Assembly: GCA_002269645.1 (NCBI GenBank)
Contig: NIVC01001524.1
Location: forward strand, 210,047 to 274,046
Length of the DNA: 64,000 nucleotides
Direction of reading: 5' to 3'
Source: Macrostomum lignano
Lineage: Eukaryota
Positions 18,760 to 48,198 of this stretch are shown piece by piece. The notes below the pieces were generated by a model. That model saw only the letters and a program-made list of their open reading frames with translations, made no database searches and was not told the DNA's origin. Within the stretch, counting starts at the first letter, position 1. The number at the start of each line of letters is the position of its first letter. Both the position numbers and the translations under genes were made by a program.

Positions 18760-20713
18760 TGTTTTTTAATAGTTTCAGGAATATTTTAGTTGAAAGTTGC
18801 ATTTTTATTGTCTGCAGATAACTAGGGACATAAGTGCAATGCTATCAAGTCATTAACTAGTGTTGTGTAGTGTCTAACAACAGAAAATTAGAAATTAGAA
18901 AGTTTACTATATTTCTATTATCATTAGAGCAAGATGCAATTAAAAGCAAGGTCTTGTCAAGCATTAGGGTTACAGAAATCATAGTTTATTACTAGGCATA
19001 TGGTTGTATTGGCTAGTAGCTGATAAAAAAAAAAAAAAACAGAATAACATTGGATGTTAATGTTAATGTCTGATATTAATTTAGGCAATCTAAATATCCC
19101 ATTCTATATGTCTATTCATTCTATAGTTCTTCACAAGAAGCCTATAATTACCCAACAATTTTCATATCTATAAAAAATTAAATATTGAAAACAGTAAACT
19201 AAGAACCTCTTAGAACACCTTTTACTTTATGTCTACTATACCAGAAATGGAAGACCATCTTGTACATAAATGTGCAATACCCAGCCAAGCTGTTCAATCT
19301 GGCTGGCTAGCAATAGGCCTAGACAAGGCAAGTCACAAAACTGCCTACTCCAAAATTATAGACATGCTACTAACTAGATGAAAGGACATTTAGCCCAAAT
19401 AATATAGTCATTGATACCATTGCAATTTACTTAAATTAGATTAATTTTTGCTTAGGGTTTAATACATAAGTTGAAGTGGTTAAAGAATTTGTAAAATCTA
19501 GAGTCAAAAAGAGATTTAAAGGCCATTTATTTCAAAAAGACAATAAAGTTTATTATCATAAGGTGATTTATAAAACTAAAGAAGTAAAGTACAAACTTTT
19601 AGTCATTTGCCTTTCTGTTTATGTTGCAAATTGCAAAGATTTTTTCATGTTCTGCTGTAAGGGGGTCCATATGCCATAGCTGTAGCTGTAAGCAAAACTA
19701 TGGCTTATTCCAATCCTCCATATTCCATAGCCATAGGGACACCAATATTACTATATAGTAATAGCCATAGCCATAGTTTTAACAAAAAGTCTAGGAAACT
19801 AAATATTTTGAATCAAGAATATAACCTAGTGCTTAAACAACTGCCAAGGTATCTGCACTCTGGAAAAAAACTAGAAAACCCTGGAATATGCCCAAAAAAC
19901 CTATAGAATTAAGACTGAACACCACCATGTTTTAATTTATTAATATTTTTGTTTCTTTTCAATCTTTCAATCTTTTCAGTTTATAGTACTATCAATATTT
20001 AAAATGAAAAGCTGGCTAGAACTAAATTTATTTTGTTTTGGCTTAGTTATATAATATTATTTTTAGCTACAACTAGGGCAGTAGACAAACTATACTAACT
20101 AGGTATACTGCAGGTAGTTTACTTTTTAGGGAAGTTAGTATTTTTCTATTGCAAATGCAATCTTTACAAAATGCATCATAACTTTTTTATAGTTAGCTAA
20201 ATAGCTAATAAGTTAAAAACAAGTATATAGAACAAATTTTTATAAATAAATTATTACTGTGTACTATTATGCCTAGTGGCTCACATTTATTGGATGTCTA
20301 GCTCAATGCCAAGCTGCATCCTACTTATGCTCAATTTCTCTAGAAGGTGAAAGGAAACACATTTGCTACATATTGTGGCTTGTCCAAGGTTCTCCCCCTT
20401 TTTATGTTTACATTTAACTTCATTTTCTCTCACTTTATTTATCCATTTATTCAGTTCCTGCAACCCATTTAATTTAGCCTCAATGTACTGCAGTCTTGCC
20501 ATTTTATCTGTCACAAGTCATTTACATAATACTTATTGACCTACTTATTATATTAATCAATAAATGACATTAACTACAACTTTCATTTATTTGATTAACT
20601 AGCCCATAGCCTATCTTAAGTCATTTGCCAGTGGGGCAAAAACAACTTACAGTTCTCATCTCAAAGAAAGCTCTAAGATGTATTATTCTATAATACATAA
20701 ATTATGGTGGTGA

Positions 20714-22610
20714 CAGTGCTCTGGGTTTTTTGTGCAAATGGGTGCAAATAGCATCCTGGTCTTTAAAATTGCACCCTGAAATTTGACTCAGGGTGCAAAA
20801 AGCACACCAGAATTTTTTGCAAAGATGTGATACGGATTTAACAATTTAGTGTTATGGACATCTTAAGTCTGTAACTTCGTATTCTAAGAATTAGGCAGTA
20901 ATTTTTTCAATCCTTAATTAATGTAATTTAAGGAATTGTCAACTGTCGATTAAATTTTGGTAAGCAGAACCTGATAAATTGAATACTGAATAGTATTCAA
21001 TTCTAAGTTAGGCAACAAGCTCAGCATGGAGTTTAAGTTGTTTAATTATTCAAATAAAACAACTAATTATAAGCTTAATTCTAAATTAAATGATTTAATA
21101 ACATTGCTGCATTGGCATGATTTGATGATTGGCTTATAATATATGCTTAATATAGGGCTATAAGCTATAGTATAATTATATATAGACTACTCCCCATTGT
21201 AATAAACTTATAACTAATGAAATCTTTTATGTTTATTTAACATTTAACAATTAAAGACAATACAATTACATTAACAATCATCAACATTAACTGTGACAAT
21301 ATAGTTTGTTGCTGTTGTTTTGTTAACAATAATTTAGTTGGTTATTTCAATTTTGTCTGCCAACCTTATGCTTATTTAATGATAATTTATAGATGTTGTC
21401 ATAATCACATGTCAATGTCATAGACTATAGTCTATAGATATAATGTAATTGTTATTGTTGTAATTGTCACTCACTTGACAAAATGACATATATACTTGTA
21501 CTTATATATTTGTATATATATGTCATTTTACTCATTCACTAGTCTCATTCACAAAATATAGAACATTAAGGTTAAGGTTAATAAATTACATAAATTACCT
21601 TAATTATGGTAAAACCTGCTCTTGCTTCAGCTTAACAGACAATAGCTCAAGCTCCAAGCTTCAATAGGCTCAATCTGCTGTTTCAATGTCTTTCAAATCA
21701 AAAGTTTAAATTTTACTCTTTCCCTATTCCAGCCATAGGCCCATAGCCATAACTGATAGCCAACTAGATACTAGATTGATTACTGAATACTGAAACAGTT
21801 ATACTGATTACTGGGTACTGGCCAAGGCCCCAATCGAAATGACAACCCAACCATATCAAGCATCTGGTCCTAAAACTGCTCCTACTCCTCTTGCTCCTAG
21901 CGGCCCAGCAGCTTTAGCTGCAGATGGTGGAGGTGGAGGACAACAACAAGGTCCACCATTAAAGCAAGCTAAGCTAATGGGTTGGCTTGTCGTTGCCAAA
22001 GCTCCTTCATCTTCACTAGTTGCAGTTAAAGGTCCTGCACTTGCTGCTACTGTAGCTGCAGCTTTTAAGTCTGATTCTAACATAGACACACCAACACCAG
22101 CCACAGTCAAGGTCATCCAGCCTAACCCCAAGGACTTTAAGTCCACAAAAAAAAGATTGACTCTTTTCTAAACCCTGGTGGTTAAAGGAGTTTTGCTGGC
22201 TCCATTATACAAAATCTAGTGACACTGCGATGTGCAAAGACTGCGGCATCACATTTAAACCAGGCACTACAGGCTGGTAGCACTGCATCTTTGTAAAACA
22301 CTCTAGTTCTAAGACACACTAGGCAGTTTTACAGAAGCTGCAGCTGCAGAAGGACTGGAGTCAGGCTGTCGAGACTACAGTTAAGTGGGCATGACCTGAT
22401 GTAAAGTGTAAGTTTAGTTTGTCAGTCACTATTATTTTATGTTTTACTATACTTTCCAAAGTAAAGGAAACTTTGAAATATACTACGCTTGTATTAGTTT
22501 TAGACCAGTTTTTGTCTGCAGCAGTGCAGCGCATACTGGTCTTGAAAATTGCACCCTGAAATCTAGCGATTTCGCACCCAAGTTATGGACAAAAAAAACC
22601 CAGACAGTGC
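20714..22610 (+). mobile_element. Non-autonomous DNA transposon (hAT-like) with TIRs and a TTF zinc-finger relic
   Basis: Ends CAGTGCTCTGGGTTTTTT / AAAAAAAACCCAG. Subterminal AAATTGCACCCTGAAAT near both ends. Internal RLFSKPWWLKEFCWLHY...DTAMCKDC...KH..S..H relic at 22158-22310. Confidence 0.55.
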
Positions 22611-25600
22611 TACTTTACTAATAGTAATAATCTGAGAATTTTGACATACATTCATTTCAGTGTCTAAAGACCCAATTTGAACAATGCTACGACAATGACT
22701 ACCCTCCGCTGGAATTGAGAAGCCTAGCAGCCAAGGCAAAACAAGAGAAATTTTGTTGAGATTCATTGGTATAATTTTCCAGATTTATATGTGCAAACTC
22801 AATGCTTCAAGTAAATTTCAAAAAATTGCCCAACTGCAAGAAAAATTTAGTTTTTTTTTAATTTATTTTTCTCTGCTCCCACCTCAAGTAACAATACTTA
22901 ATTAATACACTACTGAAACAAAAGTACTATTGCTGAAATTTTTCATATTTAAAAAAGTTAAATAATGTTTGCTAGTAAGAGTTAAGAGTTTGCTAGTGTT
23001 TATTGTACTTTATTAGGTATAACCTATTTTTGCTTGGATTTACATTTTGACTAAGCCATTGTATTCTAAGAATGTTTCATCATTATAAGTTTTTAAGTTT
23101 ATAATACAGTTCACCAAATTATCTTTGTTTTACTTTATCTGTTTTTAATATTTTTTAAATAATAACTATGGCTATGGAAATCTAAAGAGTATGACAACAA
23201 CTATTATATTTCTGTAATTGTAGCCATAAGAGCAGCTATCTATTGTAGGCATATCTGTAGTTGCTATACAGACCTATTTTACCATATTTGCCTTAAGATC
23301 CCATAGCTGTAGCCGTAGCTATGGACTGGTAGAACACAAATTTTTCTATGCTTAATAAAGGCACATCATAAAAGCTTATGTAATGTTATAGTTTGTAGTG
23401 CCATCACAACAAGAAGTTGCCTTTTTATAGGGATCCAAAATAGGATACAATCAATGTAATGGTTTGTTCCAAGCATTTGGGCAACTTTTTAATGTTAAAT
23501 CTGTAGCACTTAAATTACCTTAGTGTTTTAGAAATTAGATAATCTTATTGAAGAGCTTGTTTAGGCATTGGTATTAGCAATCTTAGATCTTTCTGAGAAG
23601 TTGATAGATGCTAGATGAAGTAATTCTACAAAGTTCTGCCATTTCTTTGGATATCTATTGTGAATTGATCTCTAGAAAACCATAGATAAACTCAATGTCA
23701 CTCTTGGTCTATAGTTCTTGGGGTCTCCTAGATCTTGGCTCCTTTAATGTCAAAGTGCAACTATTCTTAAAGCAATTGTAGGGCCTACTACTTGTATATA
23801 GGCCTAGTCTACTCATATACTAGCAAAATGCATATTTGCTATACACATTTATATGCTACTAGTAGACTTGTGCAGCTAGTGTTTCTAAATTCTTATAGCC
23901 ATTCAGTTTAAATATAATACCACTTACTGTTGCTTGTTTGGTGGGTCATTTCATAATATTACTAAAATGTTTGCCAAAGAGAGAAACCAGTGGTAATAAA
24001 TATTGTGGTGAAAAAAAGAAATATATAACTAGCTCTATTGTGCACAAATAATTGCTACTAGCTATAGGGTAGCTATGGTAATAGCTTTAGCCATTAGAGT
24101 GATATCTATGATAGATAAAAAGCAATTTATTGCAAGAAGCTTTTGGGATACCCTTTGTTTTATAGATATGCAACCTTAAGAATCACCTAGGCCCTAGCTG
24201 TTTATATTGGCAATTATTATAGTCAGGCCTAATGTTTATATATTGTATTCATGAAAATATGAATATATATTTTCTTGTCTAAGTATCTAGAACTACACTT
24301 GGCACAATATATCTGTCAAGGAAACCTAATCTTCAATTAAATACTGAATAGACCTATGATTTGATTCCATTAATTTAATTTGTCTACTCTTTAGCCTTTA
24401 CTGCTTCAGGTTCATTGACCAGTATTGTTGCTGCAACCTATATATAGGCCTAACTCTTATTCTAATAACCTTAGCAAACATGACACAAACAGCACTAATA
24501 TTGGTATAGTGATATAGGTGTAGTAGTATGAAAGCTTCAATCTAAACAAAAATCACAAAAATGATTGTTTTAAATTAGTTGTAACGACCATGATTTCTTT
24601 TCTATTTCATATTTTCTATACTCACAATTCGAATCATTTTCTGAAATTCAGAAAGCTGACATGTTACAGCCACCTCACAAAATTTTGCTTGCAGTCAGAA
24701 AAAAAAACATTATGCTTGATTCCTGCATTCAGGCGTGCATTTAATGCACTCAGAAACAAAGCATTCTTCTAAAGAGAAGATGCAAACAAAATGACTACAC
24801 TAAATATATCTAAAAATTAAAGTAAACCTGATACAATTTACAAGCAATTAGCAAAGCATAATAGTTATCTAGGCATATACTAAAATAGTAAAGGCTGAAG
24901 GCGTACACATTTGAAGTGTATTTTTCATTCAGTAGGACTTGCATGCATGCGTTAATTTACAGTATAAACAATAGTAAACAGTGAACACCTTAATAAGTCA
25001 TCAAAGCATCAGGTCACCATTTTTGTTATCATTTAGTAAAGTTAATGAGACATCTAAAGTCTAGAGATAGCCAAAAGGTATTCTTGGGGTTAGTCCCCAG
25101 ACCTAATTTGAAATGGCTAGGGGCCTATTGACATGGTTAGATAGATTCATTCAATTTTTATGCAGATTGACATTAGGCCCTATGGCCTAGCCTAGACCTT
25201 AGTCTAAGAAAGTAGACATAATCAGTGCATTGGTGTCAATTTAAATGTCATTGTAGGCTAAATAATTTTTTCTTTGTCTATTTGGAGTTTCCTGAACCAT
25301 TACTAGGCTGCCTGGCCCTACCCTAGCCCTAACTAAAATATTCCCAATTTTGCTATCATTCTAAAACATTAAGTCTTTTAGGCCCTATGCGGCTATAGGC
25401 TATATAGTCCATACAGTAAGAAATTTCATTAAATTAAATCATCACTAATGGAGTCTCAATATAATATAGGAAAGGTATATAAGCAAGAAAATAAATTATA
25501 GATATCATTTTAGTTAACTATTGTTTAATAGACTGTAGGCCTAATTAATAACTGTTACCTATGAAAATAGTGACTTCATTATTTTAATCCTAAATAATGT

Positions 25601-33140: not shown

Positions 33141-34718
33141 CTTCATGTTACTTCATTATTTGTTTTAGGCCTACTAAATTTTATCAAATAGTCAATGGTA
33201 TTCCTTGGAATAAACATGGATTCCCCTAGGCTAGAATCTGCACTTTGCATTCTTATAGGCAACCTAGCAGTATTTCAGATGACCTAATACTCATATAGGC
33301 AAATACATACAAAGACATACAATGACAATAACTGACTTATTTATATATTTTGTGTGGGTTACATTCAGGAGCCCAACTTAAAAAATATATAGAAATTTTT
33401 TTCAATATTTTTCTACAGTGGCCTATAATACCAAGGTTAATAAGAAAGGGATGTATAAATACTTCCAATTTTGGTGTAAAAAAGTTTTTATTTTCAGTCA
33501 TTTTTATAGAATTTATAGAATCAGTAAAATGTGTTTTATTTCTAATATTTTGTATCTATATATCTTTTAATCCCATCTATACATAGACAATCCTTTATTT
33601 TATTGAGTTAACTATTGTTCCACAAAATCTTACACTTTCTTATTTATAGATACAACTTGAAAATAGTCTATTCTTTTTTAAATTAGTCACCATGGCTACT
33701 GTTGGGAGTGCTAATCAGCCTGGGGACAAACTAGTAGTCAGGTGAAGGGCCAGGAGCAGGAGGCTAGAGGAGTGGCAAGTGCCCAAAGTGGTTATTTGTT
33801 ATATTTAGATAAAATGTGTCCTATCATATGAATTATTTACTATAACTAGCTTATATTTATTTATATATTTTAGGCCAGTAAAAAGCTTTATCTTGTTTAT
33901 TGTCACTTTTTCTGAGTATTTGTTGTTTTCACCTGCTAAGGGATTAATGTTACTTTTTTCAGTTTTAGTACATACAAAAAAATTATCCAGATTACTGTTT
34001 AAGTAATAAAATATTAATGAACACATTTTTCCCTCACCTTTCCAGTTCATACTAATTGAGAGGGCATAATGCTAAGCTCTAGTTGGACTGGATATGTTTC
34101 AGTTACACACAAAGCATTGAGAAAAGCATCAAAGGTAACATTCTTTTTTATATAATCATTTAAAGAATTTATTGAATTCATTATTTCATTGCATTAAGTA
34201 ATTGAGTTATTTTTTCATGTTGCTCTTGTAATAGTACACAAATGCCCAAAGTGTAAGTACATGTTTGCACTATCATGACTTATATTGTAAGAACTGATAA
34301 GTGTGTGTGGCATTCTGAAATCTGTACTATCTCTGCAGTTGAGATTAACAGTAGGAACCAAGCCATTTTGTACCAAGCCATTTTTCCACCCATCGAACTA
34401 CCAAGAGGGGGGAGGGGGAATTCCTATTCTTGGAATCTGGCAGAATTCCCCTCCCCCCTATGACATTTTTTGCTGCACCAGAATGGAGCAACACAGGCAC
34501 ACAAAATTCAAGAACATGGGCCAACGTTTTGTTGCACACCTTCTCAAACAAGAATCAAGTTGCCAGCCCTCCAGACTGTTGAGATATTTGATGATTCTGC
34601 CAGAAGGTTGGATTTTTCTCATAAGCGCTAGTGTATTCAGTATACCCCTGTGTGCCAATCAGCACTGTGCCTCAGCACAGCCTTGCAATGCCTTTAAATT
34701 TCATCAGAACATTGACTA

Positions 34719-35415
34719 CACGTGTCTGCATCAGCTCTGACTTTGTTGGTCATTAACCTTCACCCAGATGGAGCTTCTGGACCTTCAACAGGTGGCACCA
34801 AATGACTATGGACACCCTGATACAAATTTCACAAGTTTTGCTAATCAAGCCTTGACAGTGGGCAAGCCTCAACTGCGGGACAGCCTTAGCTAGTCTCTCA
34901 AGCATTTAGTCATCACTCGGACGCTGTTGGCACCTTCAACAGGTGGCATCAGATGACTATGGACATCTCTTCTGTCTTAAAAGTTACTAATTTTTTTAAA
35001 AATTAAATAAAATCATACATCTAGGTGTTCATAGTCATGATTCCCTTCCTTGAAAGTGCCAATGATGGCTGAATGATGACAGAATGCTTGAGAACCTAGT
35101 TGACAATGCCTAGCAGTTGAGGTTTGCCCATTATTGAAACTTGATAAGAAAAAAAAGACAAAGTTGCAAAAGGATGTTCATAGTCATCTGTTGCCACCTG
35201 TTGAAGGTGCCAACGGCGTTGGGGTGATAACAGAATGCCCGAGAGATTAGCTGAGGGTGTCCAGAAGTTGAGGCTTGCCTATTGTCAAGGCTTGATCAGT
35301 GAAACTTTGCATCAGGGTGTCCATGGTCACTTGGTGTCATCTGTTGAAGGCCCAGAAGCTCCGTCTGGGTGAAGGTTAGTGACCAACAAAGTCAGAGCTG
35401 ATGCAGACACAAGTG
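34719..35415. mobile_element. Foldback/MITE-like element with ~250-bp imperfect inverted arms
   Basis: GTGTCTGCATCAGCTCTGACTTTGTTGGTC... at the left end is mirrored by ...GACCAACAAAGTCAGAGCTGATGCAGACAC at the right end. A further subunit copy lies at about 35020-35125. Confidence 0.8.
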
Positions 35416-38400
35416 CCTTAATGGTTAGTATAAAAACTAATAAACCTTTATGATTGAAACATGAAAAAAGCAACTACACTTTTGTGTATGATCTTTGCCA
35501 CTATAATTACACCTAGGGGGCACAGGTAAAGCATCATCAAAACAAACAAAACAAAATTTTTCATCAGTTGTACTTGCTTGCTTAAGGAATGTTATATAAA
35601 TGCAAGATACTAGAATCTTTTAAAAACAAGTTTATCTTTCAGAGAAAAAATAATTGGTTTGATGTTTGGTTTAGCCATTTATTTTAGTGCACATTTTTAC
35701 GTTATAATCTAAGCAGTGATTTTGTATATTCATCAAGCTAATAAAAAATATTGTATTCAAATTTAACTTTAAAAGTTAATATACTTCTTAAAAATTAAAC
35801 CAATTACAAAGTTTAAAAATATCTAAAAAAGATTTTGATTTTTTATAATACATTTCAACTTTCTTTACATATCTCTAGTTGCAAACAACTTTAAATTTTT
35901 TTTAAACTTTGTTGATTATAAAATTCTATTCTAGTGAGGTAAAAAATAATTTTTACACTTCTACTTCAAGTATTATAAGCATACATGTGCAACATCTAAA
36001 ATTATGCTCATTGTATGACTTGGTTTTGACTAAAAATGCAACTTAGTTTGTTCTTTTTGTGACTTAATAATTTGTACAACTTACCTAAACATTTATGCAA
36101 ATTACCTAATCATTTTTGCAATTTGGTTTTATTGCAACTTGTTTTAATTTGCTTTATGATTTTCATTTGACATTTACCTATAGGCCTACCACTCTTCTAC
36201 TCTATACTAAATCTTTAAATATTAAACATACTAAAATGATATTAAATAACATCAATAAATGTAATTGTTATCTTTATTAAATAAAACATACTCCAGCAAT
36301 AATAATAAATTTAACCTATAAGACCTGACTGCATTATCTATATTGTTATCAAAAACAAAAATATTAATTAAATACAGATATCTGAAGAATAGGCCTAAAT
36401 TTATTTTTTGCAAAATAAAACTTACTTGTTAATGTTTATATTCTATAATTATAGTACTAATTAACTTAATAATATTTAATCTTGAAAATTCAAATACTTG
36501 GATTAGAACTAAGGCAGACTTTTTTTCTTTATGGCTATAATAATAAGGTTCTATATAAAGCACTTCATTTTTTTATTTAGACCAAGGTCTATATAAATAA
36601 AAAATGCCTAACTTTAGTTTTTTATAAAGCTTTATAAAGCTGGACAGCATGAAAAAGGAGCTATGCATGTCAATAAAAGTGATTTAAACAAGCAGTACTT
36701 TTAAATAAAGGTCCTAGCTAACTGCCTTGGAAATTGCTTGATTGACTAATTGCTTTTCAGCCTGCTCTATCTTCTGGGGAACATTTGCCTTTTGCTTCTT
36801 TAGTTCTTTATGCTTATTACCCAGCACTTTAATCTTATAGGCCTATTGATATTGCTTTAGCAGCTTTTTAGCCACCTTGCACTTCTCATTGTTTTTCACT
36901 CTGGCTTTTATAATAGGCCTATCTTTTTTCTCAAATAATGTTTAGTCAGTTTAGTGTCACTTTAATTGATCCACTTCAAGTTCAATTTGCTCAGCAAGTT
37001 AGCATTTGCAAGTGACCTCATTGGCCAGGTCTTGTTAGGTTTTCTGCTTTTTTAGTTGCTGGATTACCATTGCCCATATATAGGCATACACTATGCAGAG
37101 AGAACAAGAGCATTTGAGATTTCAAAGTCCATATACATAAAACCAGTTTGCTTTAGAAAGAAGCCAAGAACAAGAAGCAAGCAAGAATTAATTTAAACCT
37201 CTTCCAAACCATTACATTTCTTTGTCAGCAAGTCAAAGAGCAAATTTAAGACTTTTTCCATTGCCACATGGCATTTTTAGAGCATTGCCATTGGCAATAA
37301 GCTTTGCTATTAATGGGTATTGCTCAATGCTATAAATGTGGCATTAGAACTTAGTGGTAGCCTAGTGGGATCTAGACAATTTATATAGTATATTAGTATA
37401 TTAGGCTAGGCCTAGTATATTTGATATGGCTAAAAATTTATGCAGGTTTTGCTAAAAATAGAATATATTCCATAATTTCCACATCATAGGCAAAATTTCT
37501 AGTCAGATGAAGGATTTCCATAGCAAGTGGTAGTAGCACTAGGCCTATCTGCCTGGAAGTTGGGATTGCCCTTTTTCCTACTTTTAAAATCCTAGATTGA
37601 CCAAGCTGTTTCAAACCTTTTTATATATAAATAATTCTATAAATATGTGAGTCTATGACCATGGTCACTACATTGTCATTAGTTGCTAGATGAGGAAACC
37701 AAGTTAAGCCTACTAAAGTCAAGGGGCCTACTAATGCCTAATGACAATGGCAGTCTAGCAGATAGGCCCTAGGTCTAAAACAATATACCTTGTTATAAGA
37801 CTAGCGGCTAGGCCTTAAGAATAAGAAGGGCAGGGGGAACAGACCAACTATAGCATAGGACTAAACTTACATTTAGACATAGGCTTTCTCTAGCTAAAGT
37901 CATAGCCTCATACACATAGGCCTAAAGACTAGGTAGTAGTAGTAGGACCTAATAGTAAATAGGTAACTTGAGATCACTTTAGATTTCAGAAGAATTGATA
38001 GGCCTAGGTAGGCCTAGAAGCTAAGCTATAGGCCTAGCCCTAATTGTAGGCCTAGGTCCTATTCTATAGAATTGTAGGGGCCTATGGCTATATATGAAGA
38101 TGAGAATTTTCAGCAAAGCCTAGACCTTAGGCTTAGTTAGCTGCACAGCTAAGCAAAGCTGCAGAGTAAATAACTTCCACAAGGAGAATGTAGGCCTATT
38201 CTGCCAAGATTTTGCATAGCATAGGCCTAGGCCTATGCCTATGGCTATGGAAAAAATAATTTATGGAGGAATATGGAATACAAAAAAATTTATAAATTTA
38301 TACAGTATCGCTTCAAAAAAAGGAGGATCCGCAGCAGTTTCAGTCCAAGTTATTGTGGTAGTTGGGTACCACCGATTGATTATTTGCTCTCATTTGATTT

Positions 38401-39074
38401 TAATAACATTACAGTTTCTGGACGATAAAATTATGCGTACCCTATTCTGGTCCCCGTTAGTCCACTCCCTGGCGCAAGTCATGACGTATTTTTGCCCCCT
38501 TTCTGTCCCCCTTGCCCCATTTCCTGGCGCTATATGACCAAATTGTGTTTTCTTTTGTTTTACTATGTATTTCTGCGGTAATTTTGTTGAATCCTTTTTT
38601 GGCCTTTTGAGTTTTCGCCCCTCCCCAGTTTCTGGGCCTCGCCAGCCTTTTTGTGTCCTGTCTCCGGGTATTTATTCCCGCCCCTTGCGCCTGTCCCCTC
38701 CTCATTTCGTTGCGTTGCGTTTCGTTTCGTTTCGTTCGTTCGTCTTTTCCTTTCCGTTGCCTTTGCCTCCCCGTCTCCTTCTGTGACGTCCCGGCCTCTA
38801 TAACTTCCTTCAGGGATTTCCTTTTTTACTAGTTTAATAACTTTAAGATAACTCAACTAACTACTGCCTGACCGAAAACTAATTTAGTTTAACTTTTTTT
38901 TAAGCGAAGGTCCGCACTAGCTGCGGCACCCCTGATCATCTATCGTCGGTTGTCTCTTAATTTACGCGCGTGAGACATAGTATAATATTTTAGCTGTCTT
39001 TTGTAATAACTCGTTAAGCAATAAACTCGCATTAATTTACTACAATCCGTTCTTCGATTAAAAGCCATAGCTTA

Positions 39075-39509
39075 ACTTAAGTCATTTACCCGCGTGGGGC
39101 GTAAAATAACCCAGTCTCTCCTCGAAGCAAGCTCTGAGACTTTTCAACGTTCCGTAATACGCAAATTACGGTGGTGGCAGCGCTACTCTACTGTTAGTAA
39201 CACAACAAGAATACGAGACACATTAAATTTACGGTGTCTGAGGACCCGCCATCTGAATGCTCGCGCCAAACGAAGACCGCTCGACTACGACCAAAAACTA
39301 CCCTCCCCCCGGGATTGAGGACCCCGGCAGACGGAGTATCTACGAGTTGTTTCTATCGGGATTCGCCCACGCAAATTTTCCGGATTTAATTCGTGCGAAA
39401 TAACGATGGCGCCCATTCGGAGGCCTGAGCCGCTCAAATTCGACATTAGATCAAGTGAACACCGGACAATCCCGACCACAACCAAGTCTAAATCGCCCCC
39501 ACCTCATTA
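39075..39509. other. Conserved non-coding module, copy 1 (candidate structured RNA)
   Basis: Ordered conserved blocks shared with 40393-40800, separated by variable linkers. Confidence 0.75.
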
Positions 39510-40392
39510 TGTTACATGCCACAAATGCCACAAATCGTTTATTTCATTCTAAACAGTTAGTAGGCCCCTAAATTTATAAGCAGAACTCTCTGCTTTTACA
39601 CATTTTGAGTTAAGCTTGAAATTAGAAATCACTTTGTTTTTATCCTCGTTTTATTCCTATGTTCTTAACTAGAAGACTACTTTTGTCTCTGCATGCACGA
39701 AATGCACGCCTGCATGCAGGAATCAAGCATAATGTTTATTTTTTTTTGTTCTGACTGAAAGCAAAATATCGTGCGGCGGGTGCTTAACATGGCTTAAAAT
39801 AAGGCCTATAACTTGTTTCAGTCGCGGGTTGCCACTGTTGAAAACAATAAAATTTTGCATGCAATTTCCAACCTTTCCACCATAAGTCAACTTTCCCCGC
39901 TGTTGGCCCATTTTTGTTTGCACGCGTTGGCGCTTCTTTTTCCTTTTCTAGCCTTTTTGGGCCCTTTTGCTGGTTTGTTATTATTTTTGCATTGCCAATC
40001 CGGTGTTTTTGGTGTGGCCCATCCCATGAATATTTTTGCCCACGCTTGCCCCATTGCAAGAACATGATTTTTGCCATTTAAATATTTCTCATTTTCTCGA
40101 TCCCACTCTGAACCCGCCTTGGAAAACCCGGAATACCCCCCCCCCTGAATTTGGCATTATTAGTTTTACTTGAACTCTTATCGTCTGCTTGGTGAGCATT
40201 TTTATTCACTTTTAGCCCCTCTCCTCACCCCACCCCGAATCCATCTAGGTAACCGGACTCAAGCTGTGCTTGTTTCAATTAGCCAACTTACATTAGAAAA
40301 TTTATCCAACATTTAAGCACATTAATTTTTCTTTGACCAATATAAAACCCCATTCTTTAAGTTCTTTGCCTTTCTAAGTTCTTTATAAGTTT

Positions 40393-40800
40393 ACTTAAGT
40401 CTTTTACTCAAGTTCTTTGAGTAAAACAACCCGAATTCTCAACTCTAAGCAAGCTCTGAGAAATAAACGTTCCATAATATGTAAACGGTGGTGGTAGCTC
40501 ACTACGCGCTACTCATAATAAGCTTCTAAATCGATCCGTATATTAAAACTCGGTGTTTGAGCTGAGGAGAGGACCCAATATGAACGCGACCGTGCCTGTC
40601 AACGACTGCTCGACTTCGACTTCAACTACCCTCCCCCGGAATTGAGGACCCCGGCAGACGGAGTAACCAGAAGAAATTTGCCGAGTTTCGACTGCGCGAT
40701 TTTCTGGCAATTAATTCGAGAGCGAACTGATCAACTCAGGCGGCAATTTAATTTGCCCAACCACCAACTACAAAATATTTCTCCACCCCCACCTCACTTA
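40393..40800. other. Conserved non-coding module, copy 2 (candidate structured RNA)
   Basis: Same block order as copy 1, including AAGCAAGCTCTGAGA, ACGGTGGTGG, the 42-43 nt core and CCCCCACCTCA. Confidence 0.75.
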
Positions 40801-40899
40801 AAATGAATTAATAATTTTAAGCGCTATTTTAATGTACTCAGTAAAACAAAAATAAATTACAAGATTTTATTTAAGAAATCGATAAGTGTCGTCAGCATG

Positions 40900-43140
40900 A
40901 CCAACCAGTTAATACCCAGAAAATCAACTGCGTGGTACCAGGTGAAGGCGACTCCAGCAGGGCTTCTCGGGCAGCTTCCAAAGATGTACAGCAGCCTTTT
41001 GGTGGGTTGTTGTGGTGTCCCGCACACAACTGGGGCAACCGCGGCACAAGTGCTCGATGTCATCGTCAATGTTCGGCCAATAGGACGGCCAGCTGCTTCA
41101 TCCTCTGCATTCTGAAGTGGCCAAGATGAAGGATTCTTAGCACATCCTTTCTGAGTCCCTTTCGGCACCACCAGACAGCGTTCGTGGAGAAGACACCTGT
41201 TGCTGCAGGAGGGCGTGTCCTGGAGCTTCCTCAGGCGGAGTCCTCGGAGTCTTCGGAGTCTTCGGAGTCCTCAACTCGTCTCTCGTGTGACGTGGCCACC
41301 ATTCTCAGCAGTATCGAATGACGCAGGAGATCACCGGGTCCTTTTGACGACTCCTTTGCCACGGCGGCTATGTCTGCAGGGCGCAGTTGAAGGCAGGACC
41401 TTGATCGCGCAGACCATGTCAAAGTCAGCTGCGCTTTTCTCCCCGTCAAAGTCTAGCTGGGTCGTCCTCGACTGGCAGGTGGCTTAGAGCATCGGCGTTC
41501 TCCGTGGTCCTTGGTTTGCCGGTACTCGACTTCGTAAAGTGAAGTCGTGCAGCAGGTTGCCCAGCGAGGCAGTCGGTTCGCCGACATCACCGGCGTCTCC
41601 TTAGCGGGCTCGAATAACGAACGCAGGGGCTATTGGTCCGTAATCAGAATGAACTTACGGTTGTAAAGGTACTAATAGAACTTCTTCAGGCTCCCAGGGA
41701 CTCCTTCTGGATTAGGGGGTAGCGTCGCTTGAGCGTCCGTCAGGGACTTTGAAGCGTTGGCAATTGGCTTAGCTTGCTCCAATTTGGGTAGCGGTGAAGC
41801 AGCACTGCGCCGATCTCAACGTCGGATGCATCACAGCAGAGCCCGAGGGGAAGACTGGCATCGTAGTGAACCATTCACGTTCTCCGATAAGAGTTCTTCC
41901 TTGGTCCTATCGAAACCTCTGTTCCAGCCATTGTCCTTCCTCGTTAGGCGGTACAGCGGCTCCGCAATTGTTGACATGCTTGTAGTAACGATCTCAGTAG
42001 GAACTTCGAGTAGAGCTGCACCGAGCCTAGGAATGATCGGAGGCTGGATACATTCTCTCTTTGGCGTGGGCATCTCCCGGACAGCGTCAACCTTTGAGCC
42101 TTTGGCAATGCCATCCCTCGACAGAATGTATAGCCGAGGGACTCAACACAGGGCAGCGCTATCTTGCACTTGTTTTTTTCGATAACGGGGTCCTTTGTCG
42201 CTGACCCGTTGGAAAAGTCGACGAAGGTTTGCAATGTGCCAAAAGTTGATGAAGGTTTGTTAGTCGTCCAGGAAGAAGGCGACTCCCGGAAAGTCACCAG
42301 CCATCATCATTTCTATGATCGACTGGAACTCACCTACTGCAGACTTCCGTGCCGAAGGCAAGTTTTTTAAGTAGCACAACGCGATGAGTGCTCAGGGCTA
42401 GTTGCCTTTGACTGACGGACTCAAGCTTGACCTGGTTGTAGGTATCTGCCAGGTCGATTTTCGAGAAGCAGTGACTGCCGCCCTGCTTCTTTAGAAGTTT
42501 CTCTGGTAGTGGCAGTGGATGACGATTGTCGTCCACGCTGCGGGTTGACTTGACCGGCTGGCCGAAACTCGCGGCGCCCATCAGTTTACCGACCGAGATC
42601 CACAACTGCTTTGTTGCAGTCCGGCCCAACAGGTTTAGGTCGGGCACCTGGATGCCGTGCTGAGCTGACGACCCAGCAGAGTTTTTTCGCCGACGAAGGT
42701 TACTAAGGACCGGCATGTCGTGTTGGCTGGTGGACTCGTAGCGCCACTTAGTTTATTCTTTCAGCGTAGAATAACTAGCTTCCTCCAGAAAACCTTTGTA
42801 ATGAATTAGTTGCCGTTCGTCGCAGTGTCGATTTCTACGACGTGATCTTCATTTTGGATGCGGATCAGCAATTCAATTTTCGGCATCTCGGGGTCAGTGC
42901 CTGAGACTGCATTACGACGACGTGATTGCAGATGTGCAATCATGTGCAACCATGTAGAGTTTTTGAAACGGCACTCGTTGTCTCGATGGCTTGTCGAGCC
43001 GCAACGGTAGCAACGGTCTCTTTGAATTTTGCGATGCAGACGCCGGCTTTACGGGTGTAGCATCGGGTTTCTGGCCTCCTGCCTGACCTTGCTAACCGGG
43101 CAAGGCTTGTTCCCGTGGGCAGTTTCATTCGCAACACGAG
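40900..43140 (-). pseudogene. Degenerate Ty3/Gypsy gag-pol relic
   Basis: Fragments FSKIDLADTYNQVKL...LALSTH, KC..ALPCVESLGY, LRSFLGSVQLYSKF, IAEPLYRLTRKD, all in broken frames. Confidence 0.7.
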
Positions 43141-43719: not shown

Positions 43720-44027
43720 GATCGCAAGCCTAGAGAAGTTCAAGCAAATGCTGTGAAGACCTGCAATTCCTGGAGACCCTGCAGCACCCTGGAGTACAGC
43801 GCGAAAATTTCCAGCACCGATTGGCCCTCAAAAAGCTCGATTGGTCCGTTTATCGACAGCGCAATTTATTTTGCAAGGAAGCGGGCCAAGTCACGTTTAG
43901 CCGACACTATGGCTTTTTGAACTTCGTCTCAGATGTTGGCGGAATAATGGGAATTTATCTGGGCATGTCGCTGTTGACTCTGTATGAACTGCTTGAGCTA
44001 GTCTACGATTTGGTGATGTCGCTTTGA
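43720..44027 (+). pseudogene. DEG/ENaC 3' relic (psi-1)
   Basis: C..WRPCSTLEYSAKISSTDWPS in one frame and FSRHYGFLNFVSDVGGIMGIYLGMSLLTL in another; internal deletion. Confidence 0.8.
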
Positions 44028-44249
44028 GAAGATTCACAACAGTCAGCCGTTTTCGCCTTGAAACAGTACAAAGACAATGGCGCTTCTGACAGAAACAGGC
44101 AGTATGGACACCATGAGGACCTAAGAAGTACCTTGATTATTAAACGTGCATGTATAGGAACTTAGCTCTAGATTGTCAAATTAAGACGTTAGTATTTAAA
44201 ACGTTTATTAGTTCTTGACTTGAAACATAAGATGCATTGTAAACTGCTA

Positions 44250-44645
44250 TTGGGGCCGTAGCCTAATGCTCTAGCACGGCGCTCTGATGCGCCAGCGGCC
44301 CAGGCTCGGTTCCAAGTGCAGTCACATTAAAGTGGGGCTAAATTGAAATCTTGAATTGGGTCCAAAGCACAGTGAAGTGTACATGCCCAACGATAAATAT
44401 ACTCAGCAACATTGAAAAGTCGCCACCCTTTGCCCCAGTGAGCCGTGTGTTTTGACCAGCAATCCATTCAATCTTCGCCTTTCGCTCTTCCCAATCCCTC
44501 CTCACCCAGTTGCGTCACTTAAAAGTCAATCTGAGCTAGAATTTACTGTGTACTCTCAAATGTGGCGACTTCCTAATGTTGTTGAGTACAATTTCGCTTA
44601 GAGTGCCGTCAAGGTGCACAGAGCCCCTGACTCTTATAAAAATAC
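44250..44645 (+). mobile_element. tRNA-derived SINE, family B, copy 2 (interrupted by a MITE)
   Basis: GGGGCCGTAGCC...GGCTCGGTTCCAAGTGCAGTCACATTAA head and GGTGCACAGA...ATAAAAA tail match the other copies. Confidence 0.7.
44400..44588. mobile_element. MITE with ~27-bp TIRs and TA ends (Tc1/mariner-like)
   Basis: TACTCAGCAACATTGAAAAGTCGCCAC / GTGGCGACTTCCTAATGTTGTTGAGTA. Confidence 0.75.
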
Positions 44646-45706
44646 ATGTAGAGTAAAATAGGAAAACAATGTATATTCGCTTACATAATCGTTAAATAAC
44701 CAGCTTTGAAAAAAAGCATAGCTACAAGCAGAAAATAAAAAAAATTGTAATCTATGGTTCATTTATCACTCAGTTTTATTTTTCTGATGACACGCCGAGA
44801 AGCATAGTGGATAAATTTAAAGATTAAACAGCTACATGCCAATCGATATAAATTTAGTGAGACAAAACCTGAAGAAATGTTCATTAGCATGGATGACCTG
44901 CAGCACCTACAACATCCCCGTCTATAGCATCAGGTCATGATTTCAATGCCGGTTTATACTGGTTCTGTAATGAATTCTAGTCCAGAGCCTTTGCCTCTGC
45001 CCGTTTGCTGGGTGGGGTGTAGTTGTGCTTCGTGGATGTAAGGGGACGGGGTTGGTTTAGCGGGGTCGCTCTTGCCCGCTGCGTAGGCACTTGACTTGAA
45101 TTCTTGGGTTGCTTGCTTTCTTTTGCTTGCTTTCCTCGTTTCTTTTACGCTCGTACACACCTTGACTTGACATAATGAAATTCGCTTAAACTATACACGC
45201 TTCTCGCCGTCACACATGTGCCTTTGCTTTGTTCCTTTCGGCTCAGTTGGCTAATTGTATTGAATCATATTCATTCATGCAATTAAAATTTCACATAAGC
45301 ACTCCGATAGCGGCTTTTAATTTCTCGGTCATGGCATGAAAATGCCAATGATGAATGCAGAATGGAAGATTGTCTAAAATACAAAGGACACTAATTGGAA
45401 CGGTCGACGTGAAAAGTCCCTAACTAAACACTTCCGCAGTTTGTGAATTTCTCACTGCTACGTTAATTCTTTAACCCATTTAGTATAGAGCATTGCAAAC
45501 AATAATTTTTCTTGGCTTTGCGGTGTTTATACAGGTGGTGCGCTCTCTGGAGTGGAGCAGCTCTCCGTAACTAAGCAAGCCAGCTAAGAGTAGCAAACTC
45601 AGCTGCAGTGAACCCACAAAACTAAGAATAAGTAACTGGGCTGTGCAGACCAGCGCAGGTTGCAGACAGACACGAAATCGTTTCCTGATAACTTTGCTAG
45701 GTAACA

Positions 45707-47317
45707 ATGCAGTCACTAAAGTCAGCTTTAGAGAACACTTCGGCGCACGCGCTCCCGAGAACAGTGTCAGCCAAGCCAATTTACATCCGAATCGTCTGGT
45801 TGCTCATCTTTTTCACAATGCTGGCGCTTTTCCTCACAGGATTCAGCGAGTTTGTGGTTAAACTGCAGCATAACGAGCCAACCAGTACACAGGAAGTGGG
45901 AGTTGAGAGCTTCGTCTTCCCGGACGTGTACATGTGCTTCGAGAGTCCAATCTCTGGAAGCTACTCCGCGAGGGTCGATGCGGCCACAGCTGATGCAATC
46001 AATGCAGGACTGAATGCGACAAGCAGAGCCATACAGGACTATATCGCAATGCTGGGTATAACAGGTGAAGAAGCTCGGCAAACTGAAGCAGAGTTCAGCT
46101 TCATGTATCCGCAGTCCCTGCCTTACAGCTTGCTGATTGACGCTCTGGCGCACAGAGCAGAACAGTCGGTTATCACCAGCCAAATCACCTACCTCAGCAA
46201 CTATGGAACGGCTTTGTATCGGGACCTTCGACCTGAAAGCTTCTATCATCCGAAGTGGCTTCGCTGCCTGAAATGGGCCTTCAACAGTTCGATGCAAGCA
46301 AAAATTTTGCAGGCGGGAAAGACGTCAGGCATAATTGCTCGAATTCTTATCGATCAAAACTTCTCCGATATTTATAGCGCCTCTAACAGAATTCAACAGA
46401 AGGTGTTCGATCAGAGCACCCCGATCCCGACCTCGGACCGGACTCTTGGCGACCCGGTGGGTCCAGACAGGAGCTCGGGTGTCCGCGTGTTCCTCGCACC
46501 TCCGGGTCAGTACCCGTCCGACTTCACGACGTCGTTCTCGCTCAGTCCCGGGAAGCACCACACCGTGGAGATCGGCATGACCAAATATCAGTACAAATCT
46601 GGCCAGTTCGATTGCTTGGAGAATGAGCCCCCAGTTCAGTTCTTGAACCCTTACAATCGGACTCCCTATGAGTACAGTTACAGCTACTCGTACTGCTTCT
46701 ACTACCAGTATAACAAGCAGTGTCAGACTTGCTTGCAACTGTCCGGAGAGATTAGCCCAATGCCGTGGCCATTAAGAGGCTACAAATACGTGACCAACCT
46801 CACTGGTTTGCCAAACTTTTTCTCAGTATTGGCCATGAATGGTTCGCTTGGAGAATATTGCGATGCTGCGATCAACCAGACTCGTGTGAATGCCGTGAAG
46901 GCGTGTCAATCAAAACGGCTGTGCAGTGACCAGGACTACAGCGTTCGGATCTCCAGCACTGACTGGCCTTCGCTCAGCTCGCTCGATCCGTTTATCAGAA
47001 GCTTCATCTTCCAGTCTTGGAACAGGGCCAAAGCCCAGAATCTCAGTGTGCCGGCGCTGGACTTTCTGCTTAGCGGCAGCGCCGACAGGGTCGTCAGTTA
47101 CTCGAACAGAAACTTGCTTAAAGTGCACTTTCTACCGAGTAAAGTTCAGTGCGACAAGATCACCTTCTCGAGGGATTACGGAGCATCGAGTTTCATCTCT
47201 GATGTTGGTGGCATCATGGGAATTTACCTGGGAATGTCCTTGTTGACGCTGTGTGAAGTTCTTGAACTGATCTACGATATATCAGTAAATTATCTGCTGA
47301 AAAGAAGAGGTGAATAG
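45707..47317 (+). CDS. DEG/ENaC family channel subunit A (536 aa, intronless)
   Basis: Pre-TM1 SAHALPR (HG motif variant), TM1, FPDVYMC, Cys-containing loop, DWPS, TM2 ISDVGGIMGIYLGMS with GxS filter. Confidence 0.92.
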   Translation: MQSLKSALENTSAHALPRTVSAKPIYIRIVWLLIFFTMLALFLTGFSEFVVKLQHNEPTSTQEVGVESFVFPDVYMCFESPISGSYSARVDAATADAINAGLNATSRAIQDYIAMLGITGEEARQTEAEFSFMYPQSLPYSLLIDALAHRAEQSVITSQITYLSNYGTALYRDLRPESFYHPKWLRCLKWAFNSSMQAKILQAGKTSGIIARILIDQNFSDIYSASNRIQQKVFDQSTPIPTSDRTLGDPVGPDRSSGVRVFLAPPGQYPSDFTTSFSLSPGKHHTVEIGMTKYQYKSGQFDCLENEPPVQFLNPYNRTPYEYSYSYSYCFYYQYNKQCQTCLQLSGEISPMPWPLRGYKYVTNLTGLPNFFSVLAMNGSLGEYCDAAINQTRVNAVKACQSKRLCSDQDYSVRISSTDWPSLSSLDPFIRSFIFQSWNRAKAQNLSVPALDFLLSGSADRVVSYSNRNLLKVHFLPSKVQCDKITFSRDYGASSFISDVGGIMGIYLGMSLLTLCEVLELIYDISVNYLLKRRGE

Positions 47318-47864: not shown

Positions 47865-48198
47865 GGGGGCCGTAGCCCAGCGGTCTAGCGCAGGCTCTGG
47901 TGTGCCAGCAACCCAGGCTCGATTCCAAGTGCAGTCACATTAATTTGGGGCTGAATTGGAATCTCGGCTTGGCTCTGCTCGTGCAATTAACGGCCTTGAG
48001 AGCCAACCCCCAAGGCACAGTGAAGGCCGCTGTACACTCCTGTGTGAGTGTGTGCCTGCGTACGTATCCGTGCGCTTGTATGCCTGCTCAGGGGAGTCGG
48101 CGGAATGGGCAGTAATGCCTCTCGCCGGTTGTGTGCCTATGTCGCTTAAAGTGCGCCAGGGTGCACACAACCCCCCTGCCTCTAATAAAAAAAATAAA
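47865..48198 (+). mobile_element. tRNA-derived SINE, family B, copy 3, full length with 14-bp TSD
   Basis: TSD ACAGGCTATCGCCA at 47851-47864 and 48199-48212. A-box TAGCCCAGCGG, B-box-like GGCTCGATTCC, A-rich tail. Confidence 0.9.

What the first reader, a model, noticed from the sequence alone, without database searches (positions are those of the whole stretch)
39075..40800. Two diverged tandem copies of a ~420-bp non-coding module with block-wise conservation (candidate new structured RNA or element terminus)
Copies at 39075-39509 and 40393-40800 share ordered blocks: ACTTAAGTC, AAGCAAGCTCTGAGA, AACGTTCC, ACGGTGGTGG, CGGTGTYTGAG, GACYGCTCGACT, a 43-nt core, TAATTCG and CCCCCACCTCA. The linkers differ in sequence and by indels not divisible by 3, so protein coding does not explain the conservation. 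A TTTAC...GTAAA hairpin is kept in both copies with a completely different interior (a 9-bp perfect stem in copy 2). On the - strand each copy is followed by a purine-rich, K/R-coding-like tract, as if two retroelement 5' leaders were in tandem. The pair sits just outside the hypermutated domain and keeps its CpGs.
Basis: partly seen in the sequence, partly recalled or inferred. Interest (0 to 1): 0.78.

Follow-up and report, generated by a model that had tools for sequence, protein, structure and literature searches.

The report
Old copies of an unclassified repeat
The two look-alike non-coding stretches are real, but they are two of at least three old, diverged copies of a roughly 0.55-0.6 kb interspersed repeat, most likely a transposable-element relic, in an invertebrate genome, and nothing tested supports a new structured RNA.

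Summary
The similarity is real. Copy 1 and copy 2 share ordered blocks (blastn 70% over 287 nt, E 7e-20; nhmmer E 1e-29 to 1e-31).

The finding's description needs three corrections:
- The homologous unit is longer than stated, about 580-590 bp: 38951-39533 and 40271-40860. Both start TGT, and copy 2 ends ACA.
- The 737 bp between the copies and their outer flanks are not homologous. These are two separate direct copies, not a tandem duplication.
- A third co-oriented copy lies at 20509-22940. It is split by a 1.9 kb TIR transposon with an 8-bp target duplication and has lost its CpGs.

The three copies are about equally distant from each other (59-68% identity). They have stops in every frame and no Rfam, tRNA or Pfam signal. 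Folding energies are ordinary (z from +0.05 to -2.2) and covariation is negligible. Only a small 5' hairpin recurs in all three.

Each copy is preceded on the + strand by a pyrimidine-rich tract.

Best reading: relics of an unclassified non-coding transposable-element family, either solo-LTR-like or a minus-strand retroposon with a purine-rich tail. No eukaryotic genome or TE library was available, so the family could not be named. Interest is low.

The parts
38951..39533 (.). Copy 1 of the repeat, about 583 bp. It starts TGTCTC. The 3' end is uncertain: 39521 (GTTACA) or 39533 (CCACA). It is co-oriented with the other copies on +. The functional strand is unknown.
   Evidence: CpG o/e 1.38. 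A local 9-nt duplication ATGCCACAA lies at 39516-39535.
40271..40860 (.). Copy 2 of the repeat, 590 bp, from TGTTTC to TTACA. Its right end abuts a truncated Ty3/gypsy-like pol.
   Evidence: CpG o/e 1.23. Micro-duplications lie at 40353-40418.
20509..20720 (.). Copy 3, left part. It starts TGTCAC and ends at the target site ACAGTGCT.
   Evidence: blastn 20553-20720 vs 39014-39184: 72.7% over 176 nt, E 1.8e-14. nhmmer E 2e-10. Sequence; junctions.
22612..22940 (.). Copy 3, right part. It resumes after the second ACAGTGCT. It contains the decayed core and the CCCACCTCA block.
   Evidence: nhmmer 22687-22901 vs copy 2, E 1.4e-06. Alignments. CpG o/e 0.17.
20721..22603 (.). A 1883-bp TIR element inserted into copy 3. 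Its termini are CTGGGTTTTTTGT..., flanked by an 8-bp target duplication ACAGTGCT. The TSD length suggests hAT. Copies 1 and 2 show the uninterrupted site.
   Evidence: No Pfam domain in its ORFs.
39297..39338 (.). Best-conserved core in copy 1 (ACTACCCT...GGCAGACGGAGTA). The copy-2 counterpart is 40625-40665. In copy 3 the 25-nt perfect run within this core has 8 mismatches.
   Evidence: (D1).
39085..39105 (.). 5' hairpin just after the palindrome ACTTAAGT, in copy 1. Counterparts are 40402-40426 in copy 2 (10-bp stem) and 20624-20640 in copy 3 (6-bp stem, TTTGCC/GGCAAA).
   Evidence: The copy-2 interior derives from a local tandem duplication.
38450..38850 (.). Pyrimidine-rich tract on + (purine-rich on -) upstream of copy 1. 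It includes a (TTTCG)n microsatellite at 38705-38740.
39850..40270 (.). Pyrimidine-rich tract on + upstream of copy 2.
   Evidence: Not alignable with the copy-1 tract.
20350..20508 (.). Pyrimidine-rich tract on + upstream of copy 3.
40866..43050 (-). Context: a degraded, frameshifted Ty3/gypsy-like pol fragment. It runs CCHC knuckle, protease-like, RT, RNase H, then the integrase zinc finger and the first part of the integrase core. It is cut off next to copy 2. No LTR of its own is visible.
   Evidence: RVT_1; RT_RNaseH, RT_RNaseH_2, Integrase_H2C2.

Best explanation
The two modules are two of at least three old, independently placed copies of a non-coding interspersed repeat of about 0.55-0.6 kb. 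They are relics of a transposable-element family and sit in a TE-rich stretch of an invertebrate genome.

What is shown:
- The unit is discrete. Its left edge is the same in all three copies (TGT...), and the flanks are unrelated.
- It is non-coding and present in several copies.
- One copy is dead: it is interrupted by another transposon and has lost its CpGs.

What is inferred: the block-wise conservation between copies 1 and 2 reflects constraint on the active source copies of two subfamilies (ends, promoter, recognition sites), or else a short gene-conversion tract. It does not reflect function at this locus.

The subtype is unresolved. There are two options:
- (a) Solo LTRs. The supporting features are TGT...ACA ends, a CAAT/TATA-like motif about 70 nt in, and a length typical of LTRs.
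- (b) A SINE-like retroposon read on the - strand, whose fast-evolving purine-rich or microsatellite tail is the tract that follows every copy.
For: - Third copy 18 kb away.
- Homology begins at the same TGT in all three copies, with unrelated sequence upstream.
- Spacer and flanks are not homologous, so this is not a segmental duplication.
- Distances are star-like: 68/59/59% identity, or 71/64/67% without CpG columns. Copies 1 and 2 are therefore not a recent local duplicate.
- Copy 3 carries a nested TIR element with an 8-bp target duplication. The intact target site is seen in copies 1 and 2.
- Copy 3 decays evenly across blocks and linkers, p=0.37.
- There is no conserved reading frame.
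- There is no RNA-family, tRNA or stability signal.
- All three copies share an adjoining strand-asymmetric low-complexity tract, as retroposon tails do.
- The neighbourhood is full of TEs: a gypsy-like pol, a non-LTR RT element, the TIR element, and another repeat at 39646-39791 / 24660-24794.
Against: - No target-site duplications could be found for any copy.
- No terminal inverted repeats were found.
- No Pol III head was found.
- There is no PBS or PPT next to any copy, by inspection.
- No autonomous partner shares sequence with the module.
- Only three copies were seen. All are co-oriented and lie within 20 kb, with none in the other 44 kb.
- The core's near-perfect identity between copies 1 and 2 (p=0.0006) would also fit selection at this locus.
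- No eukaryotic genome or TE library was available, so copy number and family identity are untested. Two motif scans each of the metagenome and prokaryote-genome collections gave only one 36-nt, probably chance, match.
Confidence: 0.65

Rival explanations
1. A duplicated cis-regulatory module. Copies 1 and 2 descend from an ancient local duplication upstream of a minus-strand gene. That gene's body would be the CpG-less domain, with a putative first exon or TSS near 38410-38480. The blocks would be transcription-factor sites kept by selection while the neutral flanks decayed beyond recognition.
For: - Both copies sit in CpG-rich DNA (o/e about 1.2-1.4) immediately outside the CpG-less domain, whose border is at 38308/38309.
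- Conservation is block-wise, with sharp edges.
- The copies are co-oriented, and a CAAT/TATA-like motif is kept in all three.
- A CRE-like TGACGT and a GTAATG donor-like site lie near 38410-38490 (by inspection).
Against: - Copy 3 lies inside the domain, 18 kb away. It is as distant from copies 1 and 2 as they are from each other. That fits dispersal better than a local duplication.
- Each copy has its own adjoining pyrimidine-rich tract.
- The gene model is inferred only.
Confidence: 0.12
2. A family of non-coding RNA genes. Each unit would be an upstream promoter (CAAT/TATA) plus a transcript of about 450 nt, starting near ACTTAAGTC with a 5' hairpin and a conserved 43-nt core. Copy 3 would be a pseudogene.
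For: - The hairpin is kept at the same position in all three copies with different sequence: A-U to G-C at one pair in copy 3, and a new interior in copy 2.
- A second hairpin, CCGTAAT...ATTACGG, is kept in copies 1 and 3.
- The conserved core is present, and an upstream CAAT/TATA-like motif is shared.
Against: - There is no Rfam match.
- Folding z-scores are ordinary.
- Covariation contributes -0.86 of -26.3 kcal/mol.
- The core hairpin is no better than shuffled sequence.
- Most 'compensatory' changes in copy 3 are CpG transitions in stems where one CpG faces another. Such changes keep pairing in three of four outcomes without any selection (inference).
- The copy-2 hairpin interior arose by local tandem duplication.
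- The core is not specially kept in copy 3.
Confidence: 0.08
3. Copies 1 and 2 are the two LTRs of a single small non-autonomous LTR element (TRIM/LARD-like), with 39534-40270 as its internal region.
For: - Two direct repeats of about 585 bp with TGT...(A)CA-type ends flank about 737 bp.
- There is no coding capacity between them.
Against: - The LTRs of one element are identical at insertion, but these are only 68% identical. That is no closer than either is to copy 3.
- There is no PBS-like TGG... next to either inner edge, no polypurine tract at the other, and no matching target duplication (GTCGGT vs AGATTT), by inspection.
- Copy 1 has its own pyrimidine tract outside the supposed element.
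Confidence: 0.05

Closest known systems
Solo LTRs of LTR retrotransposons (Ty3/gypsy, BEL/Pao)
   Same: - A discrete non-coding unit of about 0.58 kb, starting TGT and, in copy 2, ending ACA.
- A CAAT/TATA-like motif near one end.
- Dispersed, diverged copies, conserved in blocks as LTR subfamilies are.
- One copy lies directly beside a gypsy-like pol.
   Different: - There are no 4-6 bp target duplications, no PBS or PPT, and no element with the module at both ends.
- The adjacent pol is cut inside the integrase core with no PPT, so copy 2 is not in a normal 3'-LTR context.
- The TATA-like motif would give an unusually short U3.
SINEs / non-autonomous retroposons with a conserved central domain (CORE-, V-, Deu-SINE type)
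   Same: - Length under 600 bp and non-coding.
- A highly conserved central core between variable linkers.
- Every copy is followed on the - strand by a fast-evolving purine-rich or microsatellite tail.
- There are subfamily-like differences between copies.
   Different: - No tRNA-, 5S- or 7SL-like head was detected.
- No target duplications were found.
- There is no sequence shared with the only non-LTR RT element in the window.
- A tail of 150-400 nt is long for a SINE.
- Similarity of the core to named SINE domains could not be tested because no library was available.
Terminal-repeat retrotransposons in miniature (TRIM) / LARD
   Same: Two direct repeats flank a short non-coding spacer.
   Different: The repeats are 32% diverged. 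There is no PBS, PPT or target duplication, and a solitary third copy exists.
Hammerhead-bearing retroelements (Penelope-like pLTRs, retrozymes, flatworm Sm-alpha SINE)
   Same: - Non-coding direct repeats in an invertebrate, possibly flatworm-related, genome.
- CUGAGGA strings are present in copies 1 and 2.
   Different: There is no GAAA/helix arrangement and no Rfam hammerhead hit even at E<10. The spacing is not a regular tandem array.

Membership tests
LTR (solo LTR) of an LTR retrotransposon | 5'-TG...CA-3' termini with a short inverted repeat | tested here: inconclusive
   All three copies start TGT (38951, 40271, 20509). Copy 2 ends TTACA at 40860. Copy 1 may end GTTACA or CCACA. Copy 3's end is eroded. 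The inverted repeat is limited to TGT/ACA.
LTR (solo LTR) of an LTR retrotransposon | 4-6 bp target-site duplication | tested here: not met
   No matching flanks for any copy. At about 30-40% divergence, erosion could hide them.
LTR (solo LTR) of an LTR retrotransposon | Same sequence found at both ends of an internal region, with PBS and PPT | tested here: not met
   There is no PBS or PPT beside any copy. The gypsy-like fragment has no module on its other side and no PPT at the junction. This needs the whole genome to settle.
SINE | Pol III head derived from tRNA, 5S or 7SL RNA | tested here: not met
   ARAGORN found 0 tRNAs. There are no Rfam tRNA, 5S or 7SL hits even at E<10. Only weak B-box-like strings are seen on the - strand, by eye.
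SINE | A-rich or simple-repeat 3' tail, and flanking target duplications | tested here: inconclusive
   A purine-rich tract follows all three copies on the - strand, with (CGAAA)n in copy 1. No target duplications were found.
SINE | 3' end shared with a partner LINE | tested here: not met
   No similarity to the RT element at 28136-31731 or to anything else in the window. Partners elsewhere in the genome were not testable.
MITE / TIR DNA transposon | Terminal inverted repeats plus a fixed-length target duplication | tested here: not met
   Only short AT-rich subterminal matches of 17 nt at 82%. They are not at the homology boundary, and there are no target duplications.
Helitron | 5'-TC ... 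hairpin ... CTRR-3' between host A and T | tested here: not met
   Homology runs more than 100 nt past the hairpin on the - strand. There is no consistent CTRR (inspection).
Known structured RNA families (Rfam 15), including hammerhead ribozymes, snRNA and SL RNA | Covariance-model match | tested here: not met
   There are 0 hits at gathering score over the whole window. Only SNORD102 (E 1.3) and 6A (E 4.6) appear at E<10, and both lie outside the module.
Novel structured RNA | Stability beyond shuffled sequence, and covarying pairs | tested here: not met
   z = 0.05, -0.85, -1.68 and -2.19. The covariation term is -0.86 kcal/mol. Power is low with three sequences.
Tandem (segmental) duplication | Homology continuous across the whole repeat period, and the two copies closest to each other | tested here: not met
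   Spacer and flanks are unrelated. Copy 1 to copy 2 identity (68%) is little above either copy's identity to copy 3 (59%; 71 vs 64-67% without CpG columns).

The most novel reading that the evidence does not exclude
The module is a lineage-specific functional non-coding unit: a Pol II-transcribed RNA of about 450 nt, or an enhancer-like cassette. It would have a conserved 5' hairpin and a 43-nt core, kept by selection in unmethylated DNA just upstream of a CpG-depleted gene body. Copy 3 would be its decayed pseudogene.
Probability: 0.1. Interest if true: 0.55.

Novelty: new member of a known kind. Interest (0 to 1): 0.2.

Why it matters
The module itself matters little. It is most likely one more unclassified repeat family in a poorly sampled invertebrate lineage. 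The nearest database protein is 52% identical, from the flatworm Macrostomum lignano.

It has two practical uses:
- It should be masked as a repeat and not annotated as an RNA gene.
- It is a built-in control for the neighbouring CpG-less domain, because the same sequence lies both inside and outside that domain. The inside copy lost every CpG shared by copies 1 and 2. 33 of its 89 private substitutions are C>T or G>A, and 20 of those 33 are at CpG sites. This measures directly the mutational process that shaped the domain.

Tried and rejected
- **1.3-kb tandem duplication.** Rejected: spacer and flanks are not homologous.
- **Protein coding.** Rejected: stops in all frames and no frame preference. 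There are no Pfam hits in the minus-strand frames of 38300-40290.
- **tRNA/SINE head, hammerhead, SL RNA, snRNA.** No ARAGORN or Rfam signal.
- **LTR of the adjacent gypsy-like element.** The fragment has no module on its other side and no PPT at the junction. No integrase remainder lies to the left of copy 2.
- **TIRs or target duplications.** None convincing. The AGTAAAACAAAA end motif is only about 2-fold enriched in the window.
- **PBS-like TGGCGCCC in copy 1.** It is an 8-mer only, its counterpart region in copies 2 and 3 lacks the motif, and it does not match a tRNA-like 3' end (by inspection).
- **Finding relatives elsewhere:**
  - Exact-protein look-ups of window ORFs and of the M. lignano hit found no contigs.
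  - The 23-nt core has no match in the metagenome or prokaryote-genome collections.
  - A two-block pattern hit one 1.3-kb metagenome contig (L001). It shares only 36 nt, which is compatible with chance.
  - No paper contains the core string.
- **Further copies in the window.** A profile search found no copies beyond the three.
- **Are c1=c2 blocks also slow-evolving in copy 3?** They are not (p=0.37).

Full report
**Observation**

The two stretches are homologous. blastn aligns 39072-39338 with 40390-40665 at 70.4% over 287 nt, E 6.6e-20. nhmmer with each extended unit finds the other at E 2.3e-29 and 1.4e-31. The 23-nt core ATTGAGGACCCCGGCAGACGGAG occurs exactly twice in the window, against 0 in 100 shuffles.

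Identity is uneven along the alignment. The longest perfect run is 25 nt, p=0.0006 by column shuffling. The number of runs of 8 nt or more is only marginal, p=0.03.

**Three corrections to the description**

First, homology extends past the stated coordinates. On the left it starts about 125 nt upstream of ACTTAAGTC, at a TGT present in every copy: 38951 TGTCTC, 40271 TGTTTC, 20509 TGTCAC. Sequence upstream of these points is unrelated. On the right it runs about 30-65 nt past CCCACCTCA, depending on the copy. Copy 2 ends TTACA at 40860. The unit is therefore about 580-590 bp.

Second, the copies are not a tandem duplication. The 737 bp between them and the sequences outside them give only weak, non-colinear, low-complexity matches, best E 0.016.

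Third, there is a third copy in the same orientation, 18 kb to the left, at 20509-20720 plus 22612-~22940. It is split by a 1883-bp element. That element has CTGGGTTTTTTGT... terminal inverted repeats and a perfect 8-bp target duplication, ACAGTGCT. Copies 1 and 2 show the uninterrupted site. A profile built from the three copies finds no more in the window.

**Relationships among the copies**

Pairwise identities are 68% (c1-c2), 59% (c1-c3) and 59% (c2-c3). Without CpG columns they are 71, 64 and 67%. The tree is close to a star, with a longer branch to copy 3. Copies 1 and 2 are therefore not a recent local duplicate.

Copy 3 lies in a domain that has almost no CpG. Its private changes are dominated by C>T (17) and G>A (16), and 20 of those 33 are at CpG sites. 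Every CpG shared by copies 1 and 2 is gone in copy 3. CpG o/e is 1.38, 1.23 and 0.17 for copies 1, 2 and 3.

Copy 3's mismatches are no rarer inside the long c1=c2 blocks than outside them: 79% vs 72% match at non-CpG sites, p=0.37. The 25-nt perfect core has 8 mismatches in copy 3. Copy 3 has therefore decayed neutrally. The block pattern is a property of copies 1 and 2 only.

**Coding and RNA tests**

All six frames of all copies are full of stops. Protein-level similarity is about equal in several frames on both strands. Pfam finds nothing in the minus-strand frames of 38300-40290.

Rfam gives no hit at gathering score in the whole window. At E<10 it gives only two irrelevant hits outside the module. 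ARAGORN finds no tRNA-like sequence.

Minimum free energies are ordinary. Copy 1 has z=0.05 (+) and -0.85 (-). Copy 2 has z=-1.68 (+) and -2.19 (-). RNAalifold on the three copies gives -26.3 kcal/mol over 356 columns, with a covariation term of -0.86.

One feature does recur. This is a hairpin right after the palindrome ACTTAAGT:
- Copy 1: TTTACCC/GG.GTAAA, -5.4 kcal/mol, z=+0.72.
- Copy 2: a 10-bp perfect stem, -8.7 kcal/mol, z=-3.2.
- Copy 3: TTTGCC/GGCAAA, -8.4 kcal/mol, z=-1.7.

This is weak evidence for selection, for two reasons. The new interior in copy 2 belongs to a local run of AAGTTCTTT-type 9-13 nt tandem duplications. The paired changes in copy 3 are largely CpG transitions in stems where one CpG faces another, and such changes preserve pairing in three of four outcomes without any selection (inference).

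**Surroundings**

The window is from a metazoan. It holds an array of amiloride-sensitive sodium-channel (ASC/ENaC) genes and a PID-domain ORF. The only strong database relative of the channel is a Macrostomum lignano protein at 52% identity. A reverse transcriptase in the window finds nothing above about 43%. The source genome is therefore not in the searchable collections, and exact-protein look-ups failed.

Copy 2 abuts a degraded Ty3/gypsy-like pol on the minus strand. The pol runs CCHC knuckle, RT, RNase H, integrase zinc finger and the start of the integrase core, and it stops at about 40866. No PPT lies at the junction. No integrase remainder lies to the left. No module lies on the fragment's other side, where an ASC gene fragment begins at 43911. 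The junction is a rearrangement, not a normal 3' LTR.

All three copies are preceded on the + strand (followed on the - strand) by a strongly strand-asymmetric tract. Pyrimidine fractions are 0.68-0.79, 0.61-0.72 and 0.64-0.70, against a window mean of 0.49 and a 95th percentile of 0.62. The copy-1 tract contains a (TTTCG)n microsatellite. The tracts are not alignable with each other.

**Interpretation**

The features fit relics of a transposable-element family best (confidence about 0.65):
- a discrete unit with a common edge and unrelated flanks;
- several diverged copies, all non-coding;
- one copy hit by another transposon and neutrally decayed;
- a shared low-complexity appendage.

The block-wise identity of copies 1 and 2 is then inherited from constrained source copies of two subfamilies, or comes from a short conversion tract. 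This step is inferred.

The class is unresolved. TGT...ACA ends, the length and a CAAT/TATA-like motif suggest solo LTRs. The purine-rich tail on the minus strand suggests a SINE-like retroposon. Neither passes its membership test. There are no target duplications, no PBS or PPT, no Pol III head, no partner LINE tail and no TIRs.

The rivals are:
- a duplicated regulatory module upstream of a minus-strand gene whose body is the CpG-less domain (0.12);
- a non-coding RNA gene family (0.08);
- the LTR pair of one small element (0.05, contradicted by 32% divergence).

**Limits**

No eukaryotic genome, Dfam/Repbase library or transcript data could be searched. Copy number, family name, true termini and expression are therefore untested. 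Motif scans of the metagenome and prokaryote collections gave no match for the core. A two-block pattern gave one 1.3-kb contig sharing only a 36-nt stretch, which is compatible with chance. A literature string search found nothing.

**Verdict**

This is a real repeat, mis-described as tandem. It is most likely an ordinary but unclassified TE relic. The structured-RNA reading is not supported, and interest is low. Its main use is as an internal control showing CpG-targeted decay inside the adjacent domain.

Noticed in passing
window 18756-38308: A sharply bounded domain with almost no CpG. There is none between 18755 and beyond 20500, and only one (37805) between 36000 and 38308. CpG o/e is 0-0.26 and GC is about 30-36%. 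A partial exception lies at 27-32 kb, where a reverse-transcriptase element sits. The palindrome TAGGCCTA occurs 21 times, all inside the domain. Copy 3 of the repeat shows that the decay targets CpG (to TG, CA and, in 4 of 10 cases, TA). The domain may be a methylated gene body of a minus-strand gene. The PID-domain ORF at 18034-18759 ends exactly at the left border. A possible first exon with a GTAATG donor lies near 38410-38480.
   Followed up: partly
window 20721-22603: A 1883-bp non-autonomous TIR transposon with CTGGGTTTTTTGT... ends, subterminal GGGTGCAA motifs and an 8-bp target duplication ACAGTGCT (hAT-like by TSD length). It is nested in repeat copy 3. A CxxC...H...H zinc-finger-like remnant is visible by eye, but there is no Pfam hit.
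   Followed up: partly
window 28136-31731 (+): A non-LTR-type retroelement. It has an N-terminal C2H2 zinc finger and a weak Myb/SANT-like hit, then RVT_1 (E 6e-31), then a 371-aa ORF with no Pfam match. The layout is R2/RLE-LINE-like. Its CpG content is intermediate, so it is probably younger than the surrounding CpG-less domain. The best database relatives are only 36-43% identical.
   Followed up: partly
window 40866-43050 (-): A frameshifted Ty3/gypsy-like pol fragment with a CCHC knuckle, RT, RNase H and integrase H2C2. It is truncated at both ends and has no LTRs. It sits between repeat copy 2 and an ASC gene fragment.
   Followed up: partly
window 43911-55502 and 17532-17860: An array of ASC/ENaC channel genes. 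There are intact single-ORF copies at 45707-47317 and 51162-52823, and fragments or paralogous pieces at 43911-44362, 49990-50306 and 54774-55502. A copy of the genes' downstream sequence lies at 17532-17860, on the far side of the CpG-less domain.
   Followed up: no
window 39646-39791 and 24660-24794: A second, unrelated repeat: 76-80% identity, inverted orientation, containing TGCATGCA palindromes. One copy lies in the spacer between module copies 1 and 2, and the other inside the CpG-less domain.
   Followed up: no
window 1-1447, 3955-4522, 9580-9944, 10950-11221, 11671-13898, 14500-15734, 16218-17141, 60861-61654: Several tandem-repeat (satellite or minisatellite) arrays, some with strong strand skew. 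GC skew reaches 0.54 at 12-14 kb.
   Followed up: no
window 34722-35410 and 55938-56158: Large inverted repeats or palindromes. 34722-34967 vs 35410-35173 is 85% identical. 55938-56158 is self-complementary at 85%.
   Followed up: no
L001 313-348 (metagenome contig Ga0056108_1188164): A 36-nt stretch, GACTCAAAGCAAGCTCTGAGACAAGTTTAACGTTCC, matches two adjacent conserved blocks of the module, but nothing else in the 1.3-kb contig does. By rough estimate, about 0.1-0.3 chance matches were expected for this pattern.
   Followed up: yes
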